From NCBI RefSeq assembly GCF_000143415.4, contig NW_003314402.1, positions 254,017-318,016 on the forward strand: a stretch of DNA of 64,000 nt, read 5' to 3'. This document shows positions 14,020 through 64,000 of this stretch, piece by piece (positions within the stretch are counted from its first letter, which is position 1; the number at the start of each line of letters is the position of its first letter). A program made the translations under genes and the position numbers. The DNA comes from Selaginella moellendorffii (lineage: Eukaryota > Plantae > Lycopodiophyta). Below the pieces are notes generated by a model. That model worked only from the letters and a program-made list of their open reading frames with translations. It was not told the DNA's origin and ran no database searches.

Positions 14020-15220
14020 ATGGAAATGGCGGGTAGGGCAGACGAGTGCAAGGTCTGCGAGATCAAGACGCTAGGGCTGGAGAACGATGGCGAGGCGAAG
14101 CGACTGCTACGCGCTGTGGCTGCGCAGGTACAACCGATCATGCGGCGGCGGCGCTGGCGCGTCGGCGTTCTCAGCGAATTTCGGTATGCATTTTCCCCCT
14201 TTCTCGTCGAAATCACTGTTGCTGCTGCTGCCAGGCCGAGAAATCCTTCTTTGCTTGGGCTCAATGTGAATGGAGGACGCGAGATCAAAATCAGGCTTCG
14301 CCGCCATGGGCGAGACTCTGAGTTTTACGAGTATGATTTTGTATTGGGAACAATGCTTCACGAGCTCACTCACATCGAGCGCGGGCCTCACGATGCCAAA
14401 TTCTACAAGCTCCTCGACGAAGTCACAAAGGTAAGATTTCTCTCCTTTTCTTTTCAAGCATCTTCTTGCATAGAAAGTTTTACCTTTGTTTTCGTAAGTT
14501 TTAGCTTCCTAGCTTCGTTTACTCACGTATCTCTTTGTTTCCCCTTTCACGTAAGGAATGCGAGGATCTCATGGCCAAAGGAATCACTGGCACTGGCCAA
14601 GGCTTTGATGCTCCAGGAAAGAAGCTGAGCAACGCTTCACACAACCCGCCGGCCTCGTCGCTACGTAAGACAGCTCTTGCTGCCGCCGAGAAACGCCAGC
14701 GGCTGGGAAGCCTCTTGCCGGCGGGGCCTCAGAAACCAGGAGGAGATATCAGCATGAGGAACTCTCTCAGTCCTGCTCAAGCGGCTGCTATGGCGGCCGA
14801 GAGAAGATTCAGAGATGATTTGTGGTGTGGCGCTCCTGAGACGATTGGAGAAGACGGTGATGGCAAAGCAAAAGACAGAGAGAACAGAGGCAACACTTTA
14901 GAAGCTGGTCCCAGTGAAGCGTGTCGCTACAAAGAAGCACCTCCGCCATCAAAGCGAGCCAAAGTTCCCGAGTGGGAGTGTAACGTTTGCACTCTATTAA
15001 ATCCGGTATGTTCTTCGTTTCTTTCTTTCTTTCTCTTCGTGATTAGACATTGTTTTTGCAGCCCCTTGCGCCAATCTGCGCAGCATGTGGATCCACACAG
15101 CCGGAAGCGAATTTGTCGAAGAACAAAGCGTGGGCGTGCAAGTTTTGTGCGTCGCAAAATCCAGTAGCGATTGATCGCTGCGTTCTTTGCGACGAGTGGA
15201 GATACTCCACAGGACATTAA
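14020..15220 (+). CDS. WSS1: WLM-domain (Wss1-like) zinc metalloprotease with two C-terminal RanBP2-type zinc fingers
   Basis: VQPIMRRRRWRVGVLSEF, LLGLNVNGG, the HELTH zincin motif with GPHDAKFY, and AAAMAAERR. Fingers WECNVCTLLNP.LAPICAAC and WACKFCASQN...RCVLCDEWRYSTGH*. Confidence 0.92.
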
Positions 15221-49879: not shown

Positions 49880-51520
<1,641 letters not shown>

Positions 51521-51648
51521 AACAGATAGAGAGAGAATCTCTTACTTTGTGTGTTTCGATTGGGTCGCGCAAGCGACCATCTTCGAGTAAACCCAATGAA
51601 ATCCTTTGCTCCCAGAAGTTTTGAATTTTAAAAGCAGAATATTCGGGT

Positions 51649-51666
51649 TTTGGCGGGTGATTTGAA
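51649..51666 (+). promoter_or_regulatory. E2F/CDE-CHR tandem element TTTGGCGG-GTGA-TTTGAA upstream of GCP2
   Basis: TGGCGG + 4-nt spacer + TTTGAA, ~80-95 nt upstream of ATG 51746. Confidence 0.5.
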
Positions 51667-51745
51667 AGCGGCATATTCTGTTTTGGTGCTCTTAGGGCTT
51701 TTGAGCTTAAAAGCCCTAAAGTTTTTGAGTGTGGGAAAAGAAACG

Positions 51746-52335
51746 ATGGAGGGAGATCCCGCGAGCGCGCCCAGGGTAAAGGAGCTCCTCCACGATCTGG
51801 TGAGCATCTGCCGCTCCTCTTCCGATGCTGCGTCGGTGCCGCTGCTCACGGATCACGTAATCTCGGATTCCGGCGAGCTCTTGCCGTCTCTCCAGAAGCT
51901 CTCGGGGCAGATTGTGCCGATGGTAAGCTACATTGTGGGTTTTGTGCTTAGTTCCTTGGTTTCCCTTTGTCCCGCGCAGATCCAGCTCTATCAGGAGAAG
52001 AGGCAGCTCCTTGCAGCCTCTCCATTTCCTCAAAAACTTATTGAGAAAATCGAGCAACTCAAGGACGGCGGGTATGGCAAGCTACATTGTTGCTATTTTC
52101 GTTTTGTTCTCCTTTCATACTTTTGTTTCGTTCTCATTTCATCCTTTCTTTCCTGGCGTTTAAGCGGTATTTTTCTCTTTTGTTTGTGTTTCTTCAGGGC
52201 TCATGGACTTGATCGTTACCTTTGGCTGGTGAGCCAAATTCTGGCCGACCCCGACTTAAAGAAACTGGTATCGTTGGATCGTGCTACTGGGGAAAGACAC
52301 AGGCCTTCTCTTGGAGACTTTGAGGTGAGTTTCGT

Positions 52336-52366
<31 letters not shown>

Positions 52367-55300
52367 TTTTTTCATAGTTTTTTTTATTTTGGAGAAAGAG
52401 CTTAATCGTCCTATTGCTTTTGTTAGTCGCCAGCACCGACTCTACCAAGTGTGGAACAGCGTATAACACGCAGCGGCAGAGAAAATCGGGATGCCTCTGT
52501 TACGGCAAATGGAGTTGCGAAGAGTCTTAAGAATCTTTCCATTCCTGATTCAACGCAAACTCAGCCAACAAAGCCATCGAGTAAGTCGATTTTTTCTTCT
52601 TTTTTCGCTCATTTAATCATTTATTAAACAGAACATGTGAAAAAAGCAAAGCCCCTGATCGAGGGAGTGTCGTTCCCCGCAACTCCACGCTGGAACATAG
52701 ACAGGCCATATCTGACTGGTCAGTTTGTTTACGAGGTAAGCAGGCTGTTAATTCTCAAAGACATGCTTAATAGGCTTCTTTTCTCTTGCAGGAGGAAGTT
52801 GTAGAGTATTCCAAAAGCCTGATCAAAGGTATCATCACGGAACGAGATGCTTTAAGGTTTGTTTGGTGATCAATGACTAACATGTATATAAAGTTTGATT
52901 TTATTTGTAGCAACGATGGTGACCGGGCTATAGGCCTATTTGCACCTTCTGTGCAGGTACATTGTCTTCTTTTTAAAATAACGAGAACTAACGAGGCTTT
53001 CAGGAGCTACTTGTGATTGATGATCTGCTCTTTGCAATGGTTGGCATCGAGGGAAAGAGTATTCGCATTACAAGAGAAAAATCAAGAGACAAGGCTCTAA
53101 CTTTTCAAGTTGATCCCTCAATGGACTTGTCAATACAGGTGTTTGTTTGTATGTAGTCCTTTACACTAAATCTCTTTTTCTTTTCTGTATTCAGGAGCTG
53201 ACAAAGAGAGTTTTACCTCTCTGTGAAAACTACATGGTAGTCAGCCAATTCAACGAATCAAGGCTGCAATTTAAATACGGGCTGGTGAATCACGCGTTTG
53301 CTGCAGCTTTGAGAGCAATCTTGCAGGTTTAGGATGATAGCTTATATTGCTTATGTTTGAGCTTTTGTACAGGACTATCACGCCATGGTAGCACAATTGG
53401 AGCACCAGTTTAGACTCGCCAGACTTTCGCTTCAAGGTTTATGGTTCTTTTGCCAGGTAATATATTCTTTTGTCTTTGCGTTTGATGGGCCGTAAACTTT
53501 TTTAATAGCCTATGATGGGCGCAATGCAAGCTTTGGCCGTTGTTGTGAGAAAGGCATTTGTAAAGAGCCTTTCAGGAGCTGCCGTATTAAATCTGCTTCA
53601 AGGCCAGGTGCTTGCTATGAGCTTGGCTGAAAATCTTCCTGATATGTCTATATTCACAGGCAGCCGCAATTGCTGGAGATAATGCTGCCAGAACATTGCT
53701 GCAGAAACTCACTCAAGCTGCAAGTGCCCCGTATTTTGGAATATTGGAGAGGTAAGTGATACCGGTTTTCTAGGCCTGTATGTGATAGCTTTTCTAGGTG
53801 GATACACGAGGGAGTCATTGACGATCCTTATGGAGAATTTTTTATCGACGAGAACAAGGCGCTGCAGAAGGTTGTTCCATGTTGTACTGGTCAAGCACGC
53901 GTTTCCAACAATATCGTTGCAGGAAAGCCTTAGCCACGACTTCAATGCCACGTACTGGCAACAGCGATACAGCTTGAAAAATGACGTTCCTGGTTTTCTT
54001 GCATCCGCGGCTGAAAATATATTGACGACGGGCAAGTACCTTGATGCGATTCGGGAATGCGGTCAAAATGTTCGGGTATGGACCTTGTAATCAAGATGGA
54101 TTCGACGTTTTTTAATGCAGATACCTTTCTCTGAGGATGCTAAACTCACGAACTCTGGATCGAAGCGGCATTACCTGGATAAAATAAACGTTGCATACAA
54201 TTTCGCGAGTGCTGAGCTCTTGAGTTTGATTGTGCGAAAGGTGAGTTTTCAGCGCAGGTAAATTATGGACTATAACCTGTCTCTGTGTTCTATGCAGTTT
54301 GATCTCATGGGAAGGCTGCGGTCAGTGAAGCATTACTTTCTTTTGGATCAGGTAGCTCTTTAGTTTTTGCGATCAATATGGACGTTCCTGACCTCCTGAC
54401 CTTGCAGGGTGATTTCCTTGTCCACTTTATGGATATTGCAAAAGAGGAGCTTGCAAAACGACCTGTTGCGCTGTCGTTGGAAAAACTGCAGGTTTGTTCT
54501 TTTTATCTCGAAGATCTCATTTCAGCTTCTTGTTCTGCAGTCACTTTTGGAGCTTGCACTGAGAACCTCCGTTGCTGCGAGCGATCCGTACCATGAGGAT
54601 CTTACGTGCAGTCTGGTGTGGAATTCTACGTCTTTGCAAGTCCTGTCTAATCTGTTTATATATCTTTCCAGGAAAGATCGTCGTTGATGGTGCAGTTACG
54701 AAGTTTTATGAAGAACGGAATTTTGAAGATCGATTCTCCTTTAGAATCCAACTCAGAGCCCGGCAGCATGACTGGTTTGGAGACCTTCACTCTTGACTAT
54801 AAGGTACAAGGTATAATAAGTTTCCTTTGTCACTAAAGCCGTCTGTAGACGCGGTGGCCATTATCCCTCGTGATTTCAAGGAAGGCTCTCACAAAGTACC
54901 AGCTAATTTTTCGTCATCTCTTTCATTGTAAACATGTAGAAAGGCAACTCTCTGGCACCTGGCAAGCCCATCAGGTATGACAAGTATTAAGCAACAATTC
55001 GTATTGTTAACCTTCGTTTGCAGGCGACTCGTGGCCTTGACTTTGTTGGACATTCAATATCAAGATCGTACGTACTTTGCCAACAAATGCTGCATTTTAT
55101 GCAGAGCTTCGAACATTATATGACATTCGAGGTTTCAATCGTAAGCTTTCTGTGTTGAATCTTAGTCCTTTTGCAGGTGCTAGAGCCCAACTGGCATGTC
55201 ATGGACACTAAACTCCAGAGTGCTAAGAGTATTGACGAGGTTCGCCGTTTCCTTTCCTCTGATTATTTTACACATACCCACTGCTTTCAGGTCATTCAAC

Positions 55301-55766
55301 TACACGACTTTTTTCTAGACAAGTGTTTGAAAGAGTGCATTTTGTTATGGCCTCACATATTGAAGGTTCTTAGTTTTATCAAAGTTTTTCGTTGTGCTTA
55401 TCTAAACGTTCGATTTTTTCAGAGCGTGGAAAAGCTGAAATCCCTCTGCCTGCAGTATGCAATAGCAATACAATGGCTGATCCCATCACTCTACACGCTC
55501 GAATCTCCAGCAGAGACCAAAAAGACAAAGCGTTGTCGAGGGCAGCGCTTGCGAATGGTGAAAGACGGCGAGGATGCGAACTTCAAGAACACAATCGGGT
55601 ATGCGTGCCTTTCCTTCTCATTGAGAATTCTAACGTTCGAACTTCCAGGCAAATGGAAAACGATTTTCGGAAAGAAATGAAAGAGCTGCTAAGTCTTCTA
55701 AGTAGCAGCTCACAAACCGAGCCATACTTGGCACACTTGGCTCAAGGCCTCCAGGGACAGCACTAG
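51746..55766 (+). CDS. GCP2: Gamma-tubulin complex component 2 (Spc97/GCP2), about 25 short exons
   Basis: [106 protein letters not shown] and EPYLAHLAQ. Confidence 0.95.
52336..52360 (+). repeat. (CT)n microsatellite in a GCP2 intron
   Basis: About 12 CT units. Confidence 0.85.
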
Positions 55767-55843
55767 AAGTAAGTCCACTCTTCCTGCCATGCAAGCTTTA
55801 TTAATTGGTTTTTTCTTCTCTAAGGGTCGTGAGTTCGACACCC

Positions 55844-57102
55844 ATGACGAAAAACTGGATTTCTCCTTGGGCTGCGACGATCCAAGACCTAGCGAGGAAT
55901 GCTATGGAGTCCGAGGTAGCTGGCAACACCCCCATCACGCATTTGGCATCCATCAGCGAGGCGCTGAGCCAAGGTTTGCAAAATCTATGCCGGATAGACG
56001 AAGACAGCCGTGGAGAGGTAGAGCAAAGGGCAGCATCATCTCTGGACAGCGAAGTGTGGTGCAATCTTCCAGAGCATCTCGTCGACACCGTCTTGGCATG
56101 GCTGCCACCCGCCAGCCTTTTCCGGCTCAGGACAGTTTGTAAGAGGTGGAACAGTGTGGTTTCGAGCAGGGCCTTCCTCGACGCTTGCTCCAAGATAAAG
56201 TCCCGGCTTCCATACTTCCTCATGTTCGCCGACCACTTCCACCGCAGAGTAGCCGCCGTCTACGACGTGAGTGTCTCGAGCTGGCACTTGCTACCGTTCT
56301 CCTCCTTCATGCACTGCCGGTTCCCGGAGTCGTTTCTAGTTCTAGCAGCAGCCGGGGGGCTGCTGTGCTTGGAAGGCACGGGGTCGCAAAGCGGAACTAT
56401 GTTCGTCTCCAATCCCATCACTCGGGTCTACAAGAAGCTTCCACGGATATCGCGATGAAGTCGCCTTACGTGGTCGGGATGGTGGTGGACGACGAGATGA
56501 AGTCGTATAAGATCTTGGTAGCACAGGACGGGGAAACGCTAGCGTCGCAAGTCTACGATTCCTCGACCAACAGGTGGAGCTTAACAGGAGTTTACCACCG
56601 GAGGACCGCCATCCTCGCCGGTGCTACGTTCTACAACGGGCTGCTCTTCTGCTTGACGTTCTCGCCAAACGGATTGCTCGCGTTTGATCTGGAGAGGGGG
56701 CAGTGGCTGGAGGTGAAGCTGGCGCTGCCACCATCGCTCAGCTGTCCGAACCTCATGACTCACCAGGACAGGCTGTTACTCATCGGCGGGATCGAAGAGC
56801 TCGGCAGCCTCCAGAGCGTCCACGTCTGGCAGCTCCATCCGACCAAGCCCGAGTGGATGGACGTGGAGAGAGTCCCGGACGATCTGTTCCAGAGGCTGTT
56901 CACGTCCTCGTCGGGGCACTTCATCTGCGTCGGGCAGGGGGACTTTATCTGCCTGCACGAGTACTACTCGCCGGAGATACTCATGTATGACATCGTCAGG
57001 AGGTCGTGGCAGTGGCTACCGGGGTGCTCGCTCAATGACAACATCGAGGCTAGATCGGTGCTGGGCTTCGCGTTCCAGCCCCGGATCGAGGCAGTGCCTT
57101 GA
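55844..57102 (+). CDS. F-box / kelch-like beta-propeller protein (UFO/LCR-like) with a 1-nt frameshift at ~56448
   Basis: WCNLPEHLVDTVLAWLPPASLFRLRTVCKRWN, AAAGGLLC and VSNPITRVYKKLP in one frame. MKSPYVVGM...YDSSTNRW...GFAFQPRIEA* continues in another. Confidence 0.85.
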
Positions 57103-62630: not shown

Positions 62631-64000
62631 CATAGTTACGAACACGAACACGGAACACGAACACGAGCCTCAGATTTCAGGAACCCGAACACGGAACACG
62701 ATCACGGCCCACGATGGCTCACGAATATTCTACTGAATATTCTAAGAATATGTTACTTAAAAATTATATTCTATTTCTTATTATATTATTATAGGAATAT
62801 GCTATATTTTATTATATTATTCTTAATATTTTTATTTGCACATAAACTACTTCACACTTTTAAACTACTCAAATATCCTGCATCTCATCGTCATCTTCAA
62901 CCTCATGATCTTCGACCTCACGATCTTTGACATCATCTCCATCTTCCTCTTCCTGTCTTGACTCAAGCTCGTCTTCAGGATGAGGAACTGTCTCCAGGAC
63001 TTTGTAGCTTACAAACTTGTCGTAATCACGATCATTTTTGCAGGTTAACAACCTGGTGTTGCAAGCCACAAAAACTAGATCTGCTGTCCTGTCCATGGTA
63101 AGTCTGTTCCTCTTTTTTGAAGAAACATGCTCGAAAGTACTGAACAATCTCTCCACCGAGGACGACGAGCATGCCTGACTTAGAACTCGAATGGCCAACT
63201 TCTGAAGAGCTGGAGTTTCATAACCATAGTCCTCCCACCAATGTACAGCTCCCCTCTTAGTGCGATCAGCCTTAGCATCATATGAGTTGAAAATGCCTCC
63301 TATCCTCCGGTAAGTTAAAAGCTCATCACATATCACATCCCTCTCACTGGATGTAAACATGGCCAGCAGATAAGCATTCCAGTCCTTCATGACCTCTCTG
63401 TTAGCATGCTTTTCATACTCCTGAAACTCGGGGTCCAACATGTACGCCACCGAGTGCATGAGCGAGTGATACTCATGCCACCTATTAGACATGATCTGAT
63501 GAAGTTCCCTGTACCTGCCATAATCCGACTGTCCTTCCTCTAAACTTGCATCCAACCTGTTCATGCACTCATATATCTTTCCAATCGCAGGTATATCACC
63601 GTCCACAACACGAAGAAGCAGCATAACATCCTTGGACACCTCTAGCATGTCCTTAACCTGTTGCCAGAAACTGTCATCAAAAACCGTTGCATAACTGTCC
63701 CTTCCTGCTCTCGAGTTCGACTCAGGCCTTGCTCTGTACGCAGGGCATACGAACATCTGTTGTAAAGCTTCTCGGAGCTCCACCAGCCTCTCCATCATAA
63801 TGAAGTTGTAGCCGAACCTGGTATCACAATAACACAGCAATCGCTTGTGAGTAAACTCCGCCAGCAGTGCCACTATATGAGAGTGGTTTCTAACGAAGAT
63901 CACCAAAGACTTTCCACGCTCCAGAAGTGTTGCCATCCATGGAAGTACACCGAAGTCTTTCAAGGCATTGTTCAAGCAATGGGCAAAACATGCTGCCCAT
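62631..64000 (-). mobile_element. 3' end of a hAT DNA transposon with terminus and subterminal repeats
   Basis: Terminus CATAGTTACG at 62631 followed by clustered GAACAC(G) repeats (62640-62700), ~240 nt beyond the transposase stop. Confidence 0.8.
62869..64000 (-). CDS. hAT transposase (DUF659 + C-terminal dimerisation domain), 5' truncated by the window
   Basis: Uninterrupted frame: CFAHCLN (CxxH), DTRFG, LLRVVDGD, LMHSVAYMLDP, WWEDYG...[23 protein letters not shown] and KKRNRL. Confidence 0.93.
   Translation of the reverse strand, partial: WAACFAHCLNNALKDFGVLPWMATLLERGKSLVIFVRNHSHIVALLAEFTHKRLLCYCDTRFGYNFIMMERLVELREALQQMFVCPAYRARPESNSRAGRDSYATVFDDSFWQQVKDMLEVSKDVMLLLRVVDGDIPAIGKIYECMNRLDASLEEGQSDYGRYRELHQIMSNRWHEYHSLMHSVAYMLDPEFQEYEKHANREVMKDWNAYLLAMFTSSERDVICDELLTYRRIGGIFNSYDAKADRTKRGAVHWWEDYGYETPALQKLAIRVLSQACSSSSVERLFSTFEHVSSKKRNRLTMDRTADLVFVACNTRLLTCKNDRDYDKFVSYKVLETVPHPEDELESRQEEEDGDDVKDREVEDHEVEDDDEMQDI

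What the first reader, a model, noticed from the sequence alone, without database searches (positions are those of the whole stretch)
55760..55850. Intron just after the GCP2 stop splices in frame into the downstream F-box ORF: candidate dicistronic or readthrough unit
Seen: GCP2 ends CAC TAG (55766). Two nt later is a perfect donor AA|GTAAGT (55769), then a TTAAT branch-like site, a pyrimidine tract and AAG| (55824). This gives a 56-nt intron, the typical size here, and the same AAG acceptor is used at 14555. The spliced product reads CAC TAG AAG GTC GTG AGT TCG ACA CCC ATG ACG AAA, so the F-box ATG (55844) is 6 codons after the stop and in the same frame. Only 77 nt separate the two ORFs, leaving no room for a poly(A) site plus promoter. 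Inference: one mRNA carries both ORFs (reinitiation, or UAG readthrough giving a GCP2-F-box fusion linking gamma-TuRC to SCF), or the F-box promoter lies inside the GCP2 CDS. In-frame phase has a 1-in-3 chance by coincidence.
Basis: partly seen in the sequence, partly recalled or inferred. Interest (0 to 1): 0.78.

Follow-up and report, generated by a model that had tools for sequence, protein, structure and literature searches.

The report
Intron-like spacer between GCP2 and F-box genes
In the spikemoss Selaginella moellendorffii, a gamma-tubulin-complex gene (GCP2) and an F-box/kelch gene lie only 77 bases apart, and the gap looks like a typical 56-base intron; it is most likely a tight tandem pair with overlapping or read-through RNA, not a fusion or a true two-protein message, and no RNA data could be reached to settle it.

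Summary
The sequence facts hold. GCP2 stops at TAG 55764-66. GTAAGT starts at 55769, TTAAT lies 20 nt before AAG|55824, and the F-box ATG is at 55844. Splicing would leave 21 nt (7 codons, not 6), in frame. The window is the end of S. moellendorffii scaffold GL377706.1, and the other haplotype has an identical spacer.

The candidate scores like a median GCP2 intron (13.4 bits). However, its AAG acceptor and A at donor -1 are atypical: 0/24 and 1/24 among GCP2 introns. Between 1% and 6.5% of null spacers score as well.

Whether the element is spliced is therefore roughly even odds.

A fusion or two-protein reading is unlikely:
- UAG-A is a strong termination context.
- ORF1 is 887 codons long.
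- The conserved F-box start is the second ATG (55904, good context).
- The two genes are not adjacent in other plants.
- This haplotype's F-box gene carries a 1-nt frameshift.

The only AT-rich patch between the GCP2 stop and the F-box 3' end lies inside the candidate intron. This fits the "intergenic splicing" read-through known from Arabidopsis.

The parts
51746..55766 (+). GCP2 gene (gamma-tubulin complex component 2): 25 exons, 24 GT-AG introns, 887 aa; stop TAG at 55764-55766
   Evidence: The hand model gives 887 aa, equal to the annotated product length, with Pfam GCP_N_terminal and GCP_C_terminal. The best PDB matches of one exon are GCP2 chains.
55649..55766 (+). Last GCP2 exon (...[18 protein letters not shown])
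55769..55824 (+). Candidate 56-nt intron: donor AA|GTAAGT, branch-like TTAAT at 55801-05 (A 20 nt from the 3' end), T/C tract 55809-21, acceptor AAG|G
   Evidence: The sequence is. It scores 13.4 bits, within the range of real introns, or 19.3 bits if donor -1 and acceptor -3 are ignored. The AAG acceptor and A at -1 are atypical. Splicing is not shown.
55790..55825 (+). Only AT-rich patch (at least 70% A+T in 20-nt windows) between the GCP2 stop and 57255. Candidate GCP2 poly(A)-signal region (UUUAUUAAU plus a U-rich tract) and/or pyrimidine patch of the F-box core promoter. It lies inside the candidate intron.
   Evidence: the function is inferred
55844..55846 (+). First in-frame ATG of the F-box ORF, used by RefSeq models; weak context cccATGa; the 20 codons after it are not conserved
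55904..55906 (+). Second ATG (M21, MESE...), strong context gctATGg; aligns with the start of homologues from Diphasiastrum, Marchantia, Riccia and others; likely the real start
   Evidence: the JGI model EFJ36037.1 starts here
56057..56176 (+). F-box domain (residues 72-111 of the ORF)
   Evidence: Pfam PF00646, E 1.4e-11
56448..56458 (+). Frameshift: one G missing after 56448 relative to the other haplotype, giving a premature TGA at 56456-58
56455..57102 (+). Kelch/beta-propeller part of the F-box protein, in the other reading frame in this haplotype
   Evidence: Pfam Kelch_2 and others; 100% and 99% identical to the two S. moellendorffii proteins P0001 and P0002
57255..57390 (+). AT-rich F-box 3' flank; likely poly(A) region for the F-box gene and for any read-through RNA
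   Evidence: composition only
51647..51695 (+). Second intron-like element (49 nt, CGG|GTTTTG...CTCTTAG|G) in the 225-nt beta-tubulin-to-GCP2 spacer
   Evidence: 16.5 bits; reached by 4.2% of shuffles of that spacer; not verified

Best explanation
These are two separate genes packed head to tail, with overlapping transcription.

GCP2 mRNA normally ends using the single AT/U-rich patch at about 55790-55825. That patch sits inside a 56-nt GT-AG element. When the element is spliced out, the signal is removed and transcription runs on through the F-box gene to its 3' end at about 57300. This is an 'intergenic splicing' intron as described in Arabidopsis. The resulting two-ORF RNA yields only GCP2.

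The F-box/kelch protein is made from its own mRNA, which starts in or just after the spacer, and most likely begins at ATG 55904.

Shown here: the sequence geometry, the gene identities, the typical size and branch spacing of the element, the position of the AT-rich patch, the alignment of protein starts, and the frameshift in this allele.

Inferred: the splicing itself, the poly(A) site, the F-box start site, and which ORFs are translated.
For: - The geometry is confirmed and identical in both haplotypes.
- The element scores at about the median of 24 real GCP2 introns. Its length of 56 nt and TTAAT at -20 match real introns.
- It contains the only AT-rich stretch before 57255, and no AAUAAA-type hexamer lies elsewhere.
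- S. moellendorffii poly(A) sites follow a U-rich region and then an A-rich region, and AAUAAA is used in only 7.8% of cases (PMC6413133).
- In Arabidopsis, 158 of 271 read-through loci show intergenic splicing that removes the first gene's poly(A) signal, and second ORFs are rarely translated (PMC9768141).
- F-box homologues start at the residue aligned with M21, and ATG 55904 has the better context.
- The neighbouring tubulin-GCP2 spacer also holds an intron-like element.
- Leads from this scan report several very close or intron-bridged tandem pairs in the same genome. I did not check them.
Against: - There is no RNA evidence at all.
- The acceptor is AAG (0 of 24 in GCP2) and donor -1 is A (1 of 24).
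- 6.5% of composition-matched shuffles look equally intron-like.
- The T-rich tract has other plausible roles, as a poly(A) cleavage element or a promoter pyrimidine patch.
- Identity between the haplotypes is uninformative, because 8 of 24 real introns also show no differences.
Confidence: 0.4

Rival explanations
1. There is no splicing. The 77-nt spacer is simply a very compact intergenic region. The AT/U-rich patch is the GCP2 poly(A) signal and cleavage region, giving a 3'UTR of about 50-80 nt. It also doubles as the pyrimidine patch of a TATA-less F-box promoter. The GT...AG arrangement is a chance by-product of that composition.
For: - 6.5% of dinucleotide shuffles of the spacer reach the same intron score.
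- The AAG acceptor and A at donor -1 are both disfavoured.
- The AT-rich patch is the only plausible poly(A) region.
- The genome is very compact: the beta-tubulin stop and the GCP2 ATG are 225 nt apart.
- No TATA box is seen by eye in the region.
Against: - The perfect GTAAGT, the modal 56-nt length, and TTAAT at the same spacing as in real introns together place the element in the top quartile of real introns once the two odd positions are ignored.
- A 3'UTR under 60 nt would be unusually short for a plant gene (general knowledge).
Confidence: 0.38
2. The element is a 5'UTR intron of an independent F-box mRNA whose promoter and start site lie inside the last GCP2 exon or exons. The F-box gene therefore overlaps GCP2 without read-through from the GCP2 promoter.
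For: - The acceptor sits 19 nt before the first ATG, a common place for plant 5'UTR introns.
- The same sequence evidence for the intron applies as above.
Against: - No promoter motifs were recognised in the GCP2 3' exons (by eye only).
- Such an mRNA would carry GCP2-frame AUGs as upstream ORFs.
- No RNA data are available.
Confidence: 0.12
3. A functional dicistronic mRNA: one spliced RNA from the GCP2 promoter yields both GCP2 and the F-box protein, by reinitiation or internal entry.
For: - After splicing the ORFs would lie 21 nt apart.
- Polycistronic nuclear mRNAs exist in green algae (PMC7896298), and the CDC26-TTM3 bicistron exists in land plants (cited in PMC9768141).
- Leads from this scan report similar pairs in this genome.
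Against: - ORF1 is 887 codons with many internal AUGs, so leaky scanning and reinitiation are not credible. Algal bicistrons rely on leaky scanning past short first ORFs (PMC11291117, title and abstract).
- Arabidopsis second ORFs are rarely translated (PMC9768141).
- Adjacency is not conserved in Marchantia, Physcomitrium or two further plant contigs.
Confidence: 0.05
4. UAG readthrough on the spliced RNA makes a GCP2-linker-F-box fusion protein that ties the gamma-tubulin ring complex to an SCF ubiquitin ligase.
For: The frames match after splicing, a 1-in-3 coincidence.
Against: - The context is UAG-A (UAG AAG GUC). It matches none of the known plant or viral readthrough contexts (UAG-CAR-YYA, UGA-CGG/CUA; textbook knowledge), and a purine at +4 favours termination.
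- The linker and the first 20 F-box residues have no counterpart in homologues.
- The unspliced RNA has tandem stops.
- In this haplotype the downstream ORF breaks after 204 codons.
- The two genes are not adjacent elsewhere.
Confidence: 0.01

Closest known systems
Intergenic-splicing read-through transcripts of Arabidopsis (Kurihara et al. 2022, PMC9768141)
   Same: Both involve two complete same-strand neighbours. A short intron has its donor in the 3' region of gene 1 and its acceptor in the 5' region of gene 2, and it covers gene 1's poly(A) signal region. The expected outcome is a bicistronic RNA in which only ORF1 is translated.
   Different: Here splicing and read-through are not shown. 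The gap is far smaller (77 nt), and the donor lies 2 nt after the stop. The junction would therefore not itself mark the stop as premature; only the long 3'UTR would.
CDC26-TTM3 bicistronic transcript of land plants and polycistronic mRNAs of green algae (PMC7896298, PMC11291117)
   Same: Two unrelated ORFs would sit close together on one nuclear mRNA.
   Different: Those cases have short first ORFs, or contexts that allow leaky scanning, and their gene order is conserved across species. Here ORF1 is 887 codons, and adjacency is absent in the four other plant loci examined.
Programmed stop-codon readthrough (e.g. the plant eRF1 and viral UAG-CAR-YYA contexts)
   Same: An in-frame ORF follows a UAG.
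   Different: The context does not match, the extension is not conserved, and in this allele the downstream ORF is broken.
F-box/kelch-repeat protein At5g15710 family
   Same: The protein has an F-box domain plus a kelch beta-propeller. It is 41-57% identical to lycophyte, moss and liverwort members over the kelch/beta-propeller part, and the coding region is a single exon as in Marchantia.
   Different: The window's allele has a 1-nt deletion. The family's substrate is unknown; At5g15710 is mainly used as a qPCR reference gene.

Membership tests
U2-type GT-AG intron of this genome | GT...AG with length in the genome's range | tested here: met
   The element is 56 nt. GCP2 introns are 45-126 nt with a median of 52, and four are exactly 56 nt.
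U2-type GT-AG intron of this genome | Branch-like YTNAY 10-40 nt before the acceptor, plus a pyrimidine tract | tested here: met
   TTAAT lies 20 nt from the 3' end, as in GCP2 introns 3, 5 and 18. A 13-nt T/C tract follows.
U2-type GT-AG intron of this genome | Usual YAG acceptor and G at donor -1 | tested here: not met
   The candidate has an AAG acceptor and A at -1. In GCP2 these occur in 0/24 and 1/24 introns. Among the 20 best intron-like elements of the window, 2 have A at acceptor -3, one of them this candidate.
U2-type GT-AG intron of this genome | Removed from RNA (junction reads) | not testable with these tools
No Logan RNA contig was found.
Intergenic-splicing read-through locus (PMC9768141) | Two complete same-strand adjacent genes | tested here: met
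Intergenic-splicing read-through locus (PMC9768141) | The intron removes the first gene's poly(A) signal or site | tested here: inconclusive
   The only AT-rich patch before 57255 lies inside the element. The actual poly(A) site is unknown.
Intergenic-splicing read-through locus (PMC9768141) | RNA molecules spanning both genes | not testable with these tools
   No reads or RNA contigs were available.
Functional bicistronic mRNA (CDC26-TTM3 / algal type) | First ORF short or skippable, so that ribosomes can reach ORF2 | tested here: not met
   ORF1 is 887 codons with a strong start context, acgATGg.
Functional bicistronic mRNA (CDC26-TTM3 / algal type) | Gene order conserved across species | tested here: not met
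   There is no GCP2 within 1-10 kb upstream of the F-box homologue in Marchantia, Physcomitrium, an unidentified plant (Logan contigs) or a JGI contig.
Programmed stop-codon readthrough | Known leaky stop context | tested here: not met
   The spliced context is UAG AAG GUC; the unspliced one is UAG AAG UAA. The motif list comes from general knowledge.
Programmed stop-codon readthrough | Conserved in-frame extension | tested here: not met
   The first 20 F-box residues are not shared by homologues. The ORF is frameshifted in this haplotype.
GCP2 (gamma-tubulin complex component 2) | GCP N- and C-terminal domains, closest to GCP2 rather than GCP3-6 | tested here: met
   Pfam PF17681 and PF04130 hit the 887-aa product. 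One exon matches GCP2 chains 6tf9 and 7as4 at E about 1e-11.
F-box/kelch At5g15710 family | F-box domain followed by a kelch propeller in one open frame | tested here: not met
   Both domains are present, but in this window they are split by a 1-nt deletion. The other haplotype is intact at 419 aa.

The most novel reading that the evidence does not exclude
The spliced GCP2-F-box RNA is the main or only F-box message, and both proteins are made from it. It would be one instance of a genome-wide set of intron-bridged, operon-like gene pairs in Selaginella, here coupling a microtubule-nucleation subunit with an SCF substrate adaptor. It would lie next to a beta-tubulin gene that may be bridged to GCP2 in the same way.
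Probability: 0.05. Interest if true: 0.75.

Novelty: new member of a known kind. Interest (0 to 1): 0.3.

Why it matters
If the element is spliced, this locus would be a clean, minimal example of splicing competing with 3'-end formation to decide whether a plant gene's transcription runs into its neighbour. The donor lies 2 nt after a stop codon, and the whole poly(A) region lies inside a 56-nt intron.

Together with other very tight tandem pairs noted in this genome, it could help show how a compact land-plant genome handles gene boundaries.

By itself, without RNA evidence, it is an ordinary tight gene pair. It does not support a physical GCP2-F-box link.

Tried and rejected
- **RNA contigs via proteins.**
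  - Word searches were run with both halves of the F-box ORF and with the penultimate GCP2 exon inside a mechanical ORF.
  - Exact look-ups were also made.
  - These found only the two genome-annotation proteins of S. moellendorffii and no Logan RNA contig.
- **Haplotype conservation of the spacer.** It shows 0 differences in 77 nt. This is uninformative, because short GCP2 introns differ at only about 1.8-3.5% and 8 of 24 have no difference.
- **Automatic exon chaining by dynamic programming.** It over-spliced or under-spliced. I replaced it with a hand model that reproduces the annotated 887 aa.
- **Window-wide screen for other 'stop - intron - ATG' bridges.** The other hits are ordinary internal introns.
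- **GCP2 C-terminal exons against PDB sequences.** There was no useful match, so conservation of the C-terminus was not checked that way.
- **Alternative donors upstream of the stop.** These include the intron-24 donor and two GT sites in the last exon. Joined to the 55824 acceptor, all run into TGA within three codons, so no spliced fusion is possible (read).
- **Literature.** Nothing in the held library covers read-through or polycistronic nuclear RNAs in Selaginella.
- **Joined sequences.** The spliced GCP2 model was built and used only inside scripts. The spliced junction was not searched or folded.

Full report
**What the window is**

The F-box ORF matches two Selaginella moellendorffii proteins at 99-100% identity. 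The encoding contig shows that the window is the last 64 kb of scaffold GL377706.1, with record position = window position + 254,016.

The annotated genes around the finding are:
- a sugar transporter (-)
- beta-tubulin (+, stop 51518-20)
- GCP2 (+, 51746-55766, 887 aa, Pfam GCP_N_terminal and GCP_C_terminal)
- the F-box/kelch gene (+, from 55844)
- an unnamed gene (-)

An internal exon matches solved GCP2 chains at E about 1e-11.

The second haplotype of the assembly (GL377567.1, locus L002) has the same gene order and the same 77-nt gap.

**Checking the observation**

The details are:
- TAG at 55764-66
- AA|GTAAGT, with GT at 55769
- TTAAT at 55801-05
- a 13-nt T/C tract at 55809-21
- AAG ending at 55824
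- ATG at 55844

Removing 55769-55824 leaves 21 nt between stop and ATG. That is 7 codons, not 6, and it is in frame. Unspliced, the frame meets TAA one codon after TAG.

I built the GCP2 exon chain by hand. It has 24 GT-AG introns and gives exactly the annotated 887 residues. Intron lengths are 45-126 nt with a median of 52, and four are 56 nt. 'Typical size' is therefore correct. TTAAT or CTAAT about 21 nt before the acceptor is seen in three real introns.

Two features are atypical:
- All 24 acceptors are CAG or TAG, never AAG.
- 23 of 24 donors follow a G, whereas here it is an A.

**Is it more than chance?**

A donor and acceptor weight matrix plus a length term, trained on the 24 introns, gives the candidate 13.4 bits. 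Real introns scored leave-one-out span 6.5-24.5 bits, with a median near 14. Ignoring the two odd positions, it scores 19.3 bits. At 18 bits or more the window has 20 such elements, against about 2.3 expected from Markov-simulated sequence (about 1.2 per strand, both strands).

Simulated sequence gives about 30 pairs at 13.4 bits or more per 64-kb strand, or about 0.01 per 77-nt gap. The stricter control is dinucleotide shuffles of the spacer itself, and these reach 13.4 bits in 6.5% of trials.

I combined this with rough priors for UTR introns and with the penalties for AAG and for A at -1. On that basis I put the chance that the element is really spliced at about one half.

The spacer is identical in the two haplotypes. 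This says nothing, because 8 of 24 real introns are also identical and the local noncoding event rate is only about 2-3.5%.

**RNA evidence**

None could be obtained.
- Word searches with the N-terminal and C-terminal halves of the F-box ORF found no RNA-derived contig of this species.
- Neither did a search with the penultimate GCP2 exon, nor exact look-ups.
- I sent no spliced or read-through sequence to any search tool. The joined GCP2 model lived only in scripts.

**The F-box gene**

Pfam finds an F-box at residues 72-111 and kelch/beta-propeller matches in the downstream frame.

In this window the gene is broken. One G is missing after 56448 relative to the other haplotype, which gives TGA at 56456-58. 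The other allele is an intact single exon of 419 aa (XP_002962574.2).

The RefSeq model on this scaffold (XP_024522235.1, 380 aa) hides the frameshift. It uses a 118-nt pseudo-intron (56052-56169) that deletes the F-box and reads about 96 residues out of frame (compared).

The alleles differ by 9 synonymous and 6 non-synonymous changes. The gene is therefore under constraint, and the frameshift is either recent or an assembly error.

**Where the F-box protein starts**

Homologues were aligned from Diphasiastrum, Marchantia, Riccia, mosses and others. Several begin at the residue aligned with M21 of the Selaginella ORF (MESE.. against MDSE.., MEDH.., MDDN..), and the moss homologues carry an internal Met there. 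The 20 residues before it have no counterpart.

ATG 55904 has a strong context (gctATGg), whereas ATG 55844 is weak (cccATGa). The original JGI model also started at M21. The real start is probably 55904, which makes the gap between coding regions 137 nt.

**Signals in the gap**

Between the GCP2 stop and 57255, the only stretch with at least 70% A+T is 55790-55825. It lies entirely inside the candidate intron. There is no AAUAAA-type hexamer anywhere before the F-box 3' flank.

In S. moellendorffii, poly(A) sites follow a U-rich and then an A-rich region, and AAUAAA occurs in only 7.8% of cases (PMC6413133). This patch is therefore the only credible GCP2 poly(A) region short of the F-box 3' end. 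If the element is spliced, that region is deleted and transcription should continue through the F-box gene.

This is the mechanism shown for Arabidopsis 'intergenic splicing' read-through transcripts (PMC9768141):
- 271 loci were found, with intergenic splicing seen at 158 of them.
- Splicing removes the first gene's poly(A) signals.
- Second ORFs are rarely translated.
- The RNAs are targets of nonsense-mediated mRNA decay (NMD).
- Most second genes also have their own start sites.

The same T-rich tract could instead be only a cleavage element and/or a promoter pyrimidine patch. That is the main rival.

**Why a fusion or a two-protein message is unlikely**

- The stop context UAG-A matches no known readthrough motif (general knowledge).
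- The first ORF is 887 codons with a strong start. This rules out leaky scanning and makes reinitiation very improbable.
- Other donors upstream of the stop, joined to the 55824 acceptor, run into TGA within three codons (read).
- GCP2 is not found upstream of the F-box homologue in Marchantia (L008), Physcomitrium (L010), an unidentified plant (L003-L005) or a JGI contig (L006, L007).

**Context from this scan**

Earlier notes on the same genome describe several very tight or intron-bridged tandem pairs, some said to be seen spliced in assembled RNA. I treated these as leads only.

In my own window, a screen for other stop-intron-ATG bridges found only ordinary internal introns. However, the neighbouring beta-tubulin-to-GCP2 spacer holds a 49-nt intron-like element. 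It scores 16.5 bits, a level reached by 4.2% of shuffles.

**Verdict**

- Splicing is plausible but unproven, at about even odds.
- The most likely biology is an ordinary tight tandem pair with overlapping or read-through transcription of the known intergenic-splicing kind.
- The F-box protein is most likely made from its own mRNA.
- The dicistronic-translation reading (about 5%) and the readthrough-fusion reading (about 1%) are poorly supported.

Noticed in passing
window 56448-56458 (and 56052-56169): This haplotype's F-box/kelch gene lacks one G relative to the other haplotype, giving a premature TGA. RefSeq model XP_024522235.1 (380 aa) masks this with a 118-nt pseudo-intron that removes the F-box domain and reads about 96 residues out of frame. 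It is either a real pseudo-allele or an assembly error.
   Followed up: yes
window 49880-55766: A beta-tubulin gene and GCP2, a gamma-tubulin ring complex subunit, lie head to tail on the same strand, 225 nt apart. They are two microtubule genes in a row. The order is the same in both haplotypes.
   Followed up: partly
window 51647-51695: A 49-nt intron-like element (CGG|GTTTTG...CTCTTAG|G, 16.5 bits) lies in the tubulin-GCP2 spacer, downstream of AGTAAA and AATGAA hexamers at 51586 and 51595. It may be a GCP2 5'UTR intron or a second bridging intron. It shows no haplotype differences, while five substitutions lie just upstream of it.
   Followed up: partly
CACGTAAG|GAATG, a 61-nt intron-like element with an AAG acceptor 3 nt before an ATG. 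It is an unverified prediction of the same kind, not evidence that AAG acceptors are used.
   Followed up: partly
window 52325-52426 (GCP2 intron 3) and 52072-52197 (intron 2): The two long GCP2 introns carry CT and T-rich simple repeats. They account for most of the haplotype divergence: 17 substitutions and indels of 30, 13 and 26 nt. The short introns differ by only 0-2 changes.
   Followed up: no
window 62869-63936 (-): An annotated 355-aa gene with a hAT-family dimerisation domain (PF05699) lies near the scaffold end. The other-haplotype locus fetched (L002) lists no counterpart.
   Followed up: no
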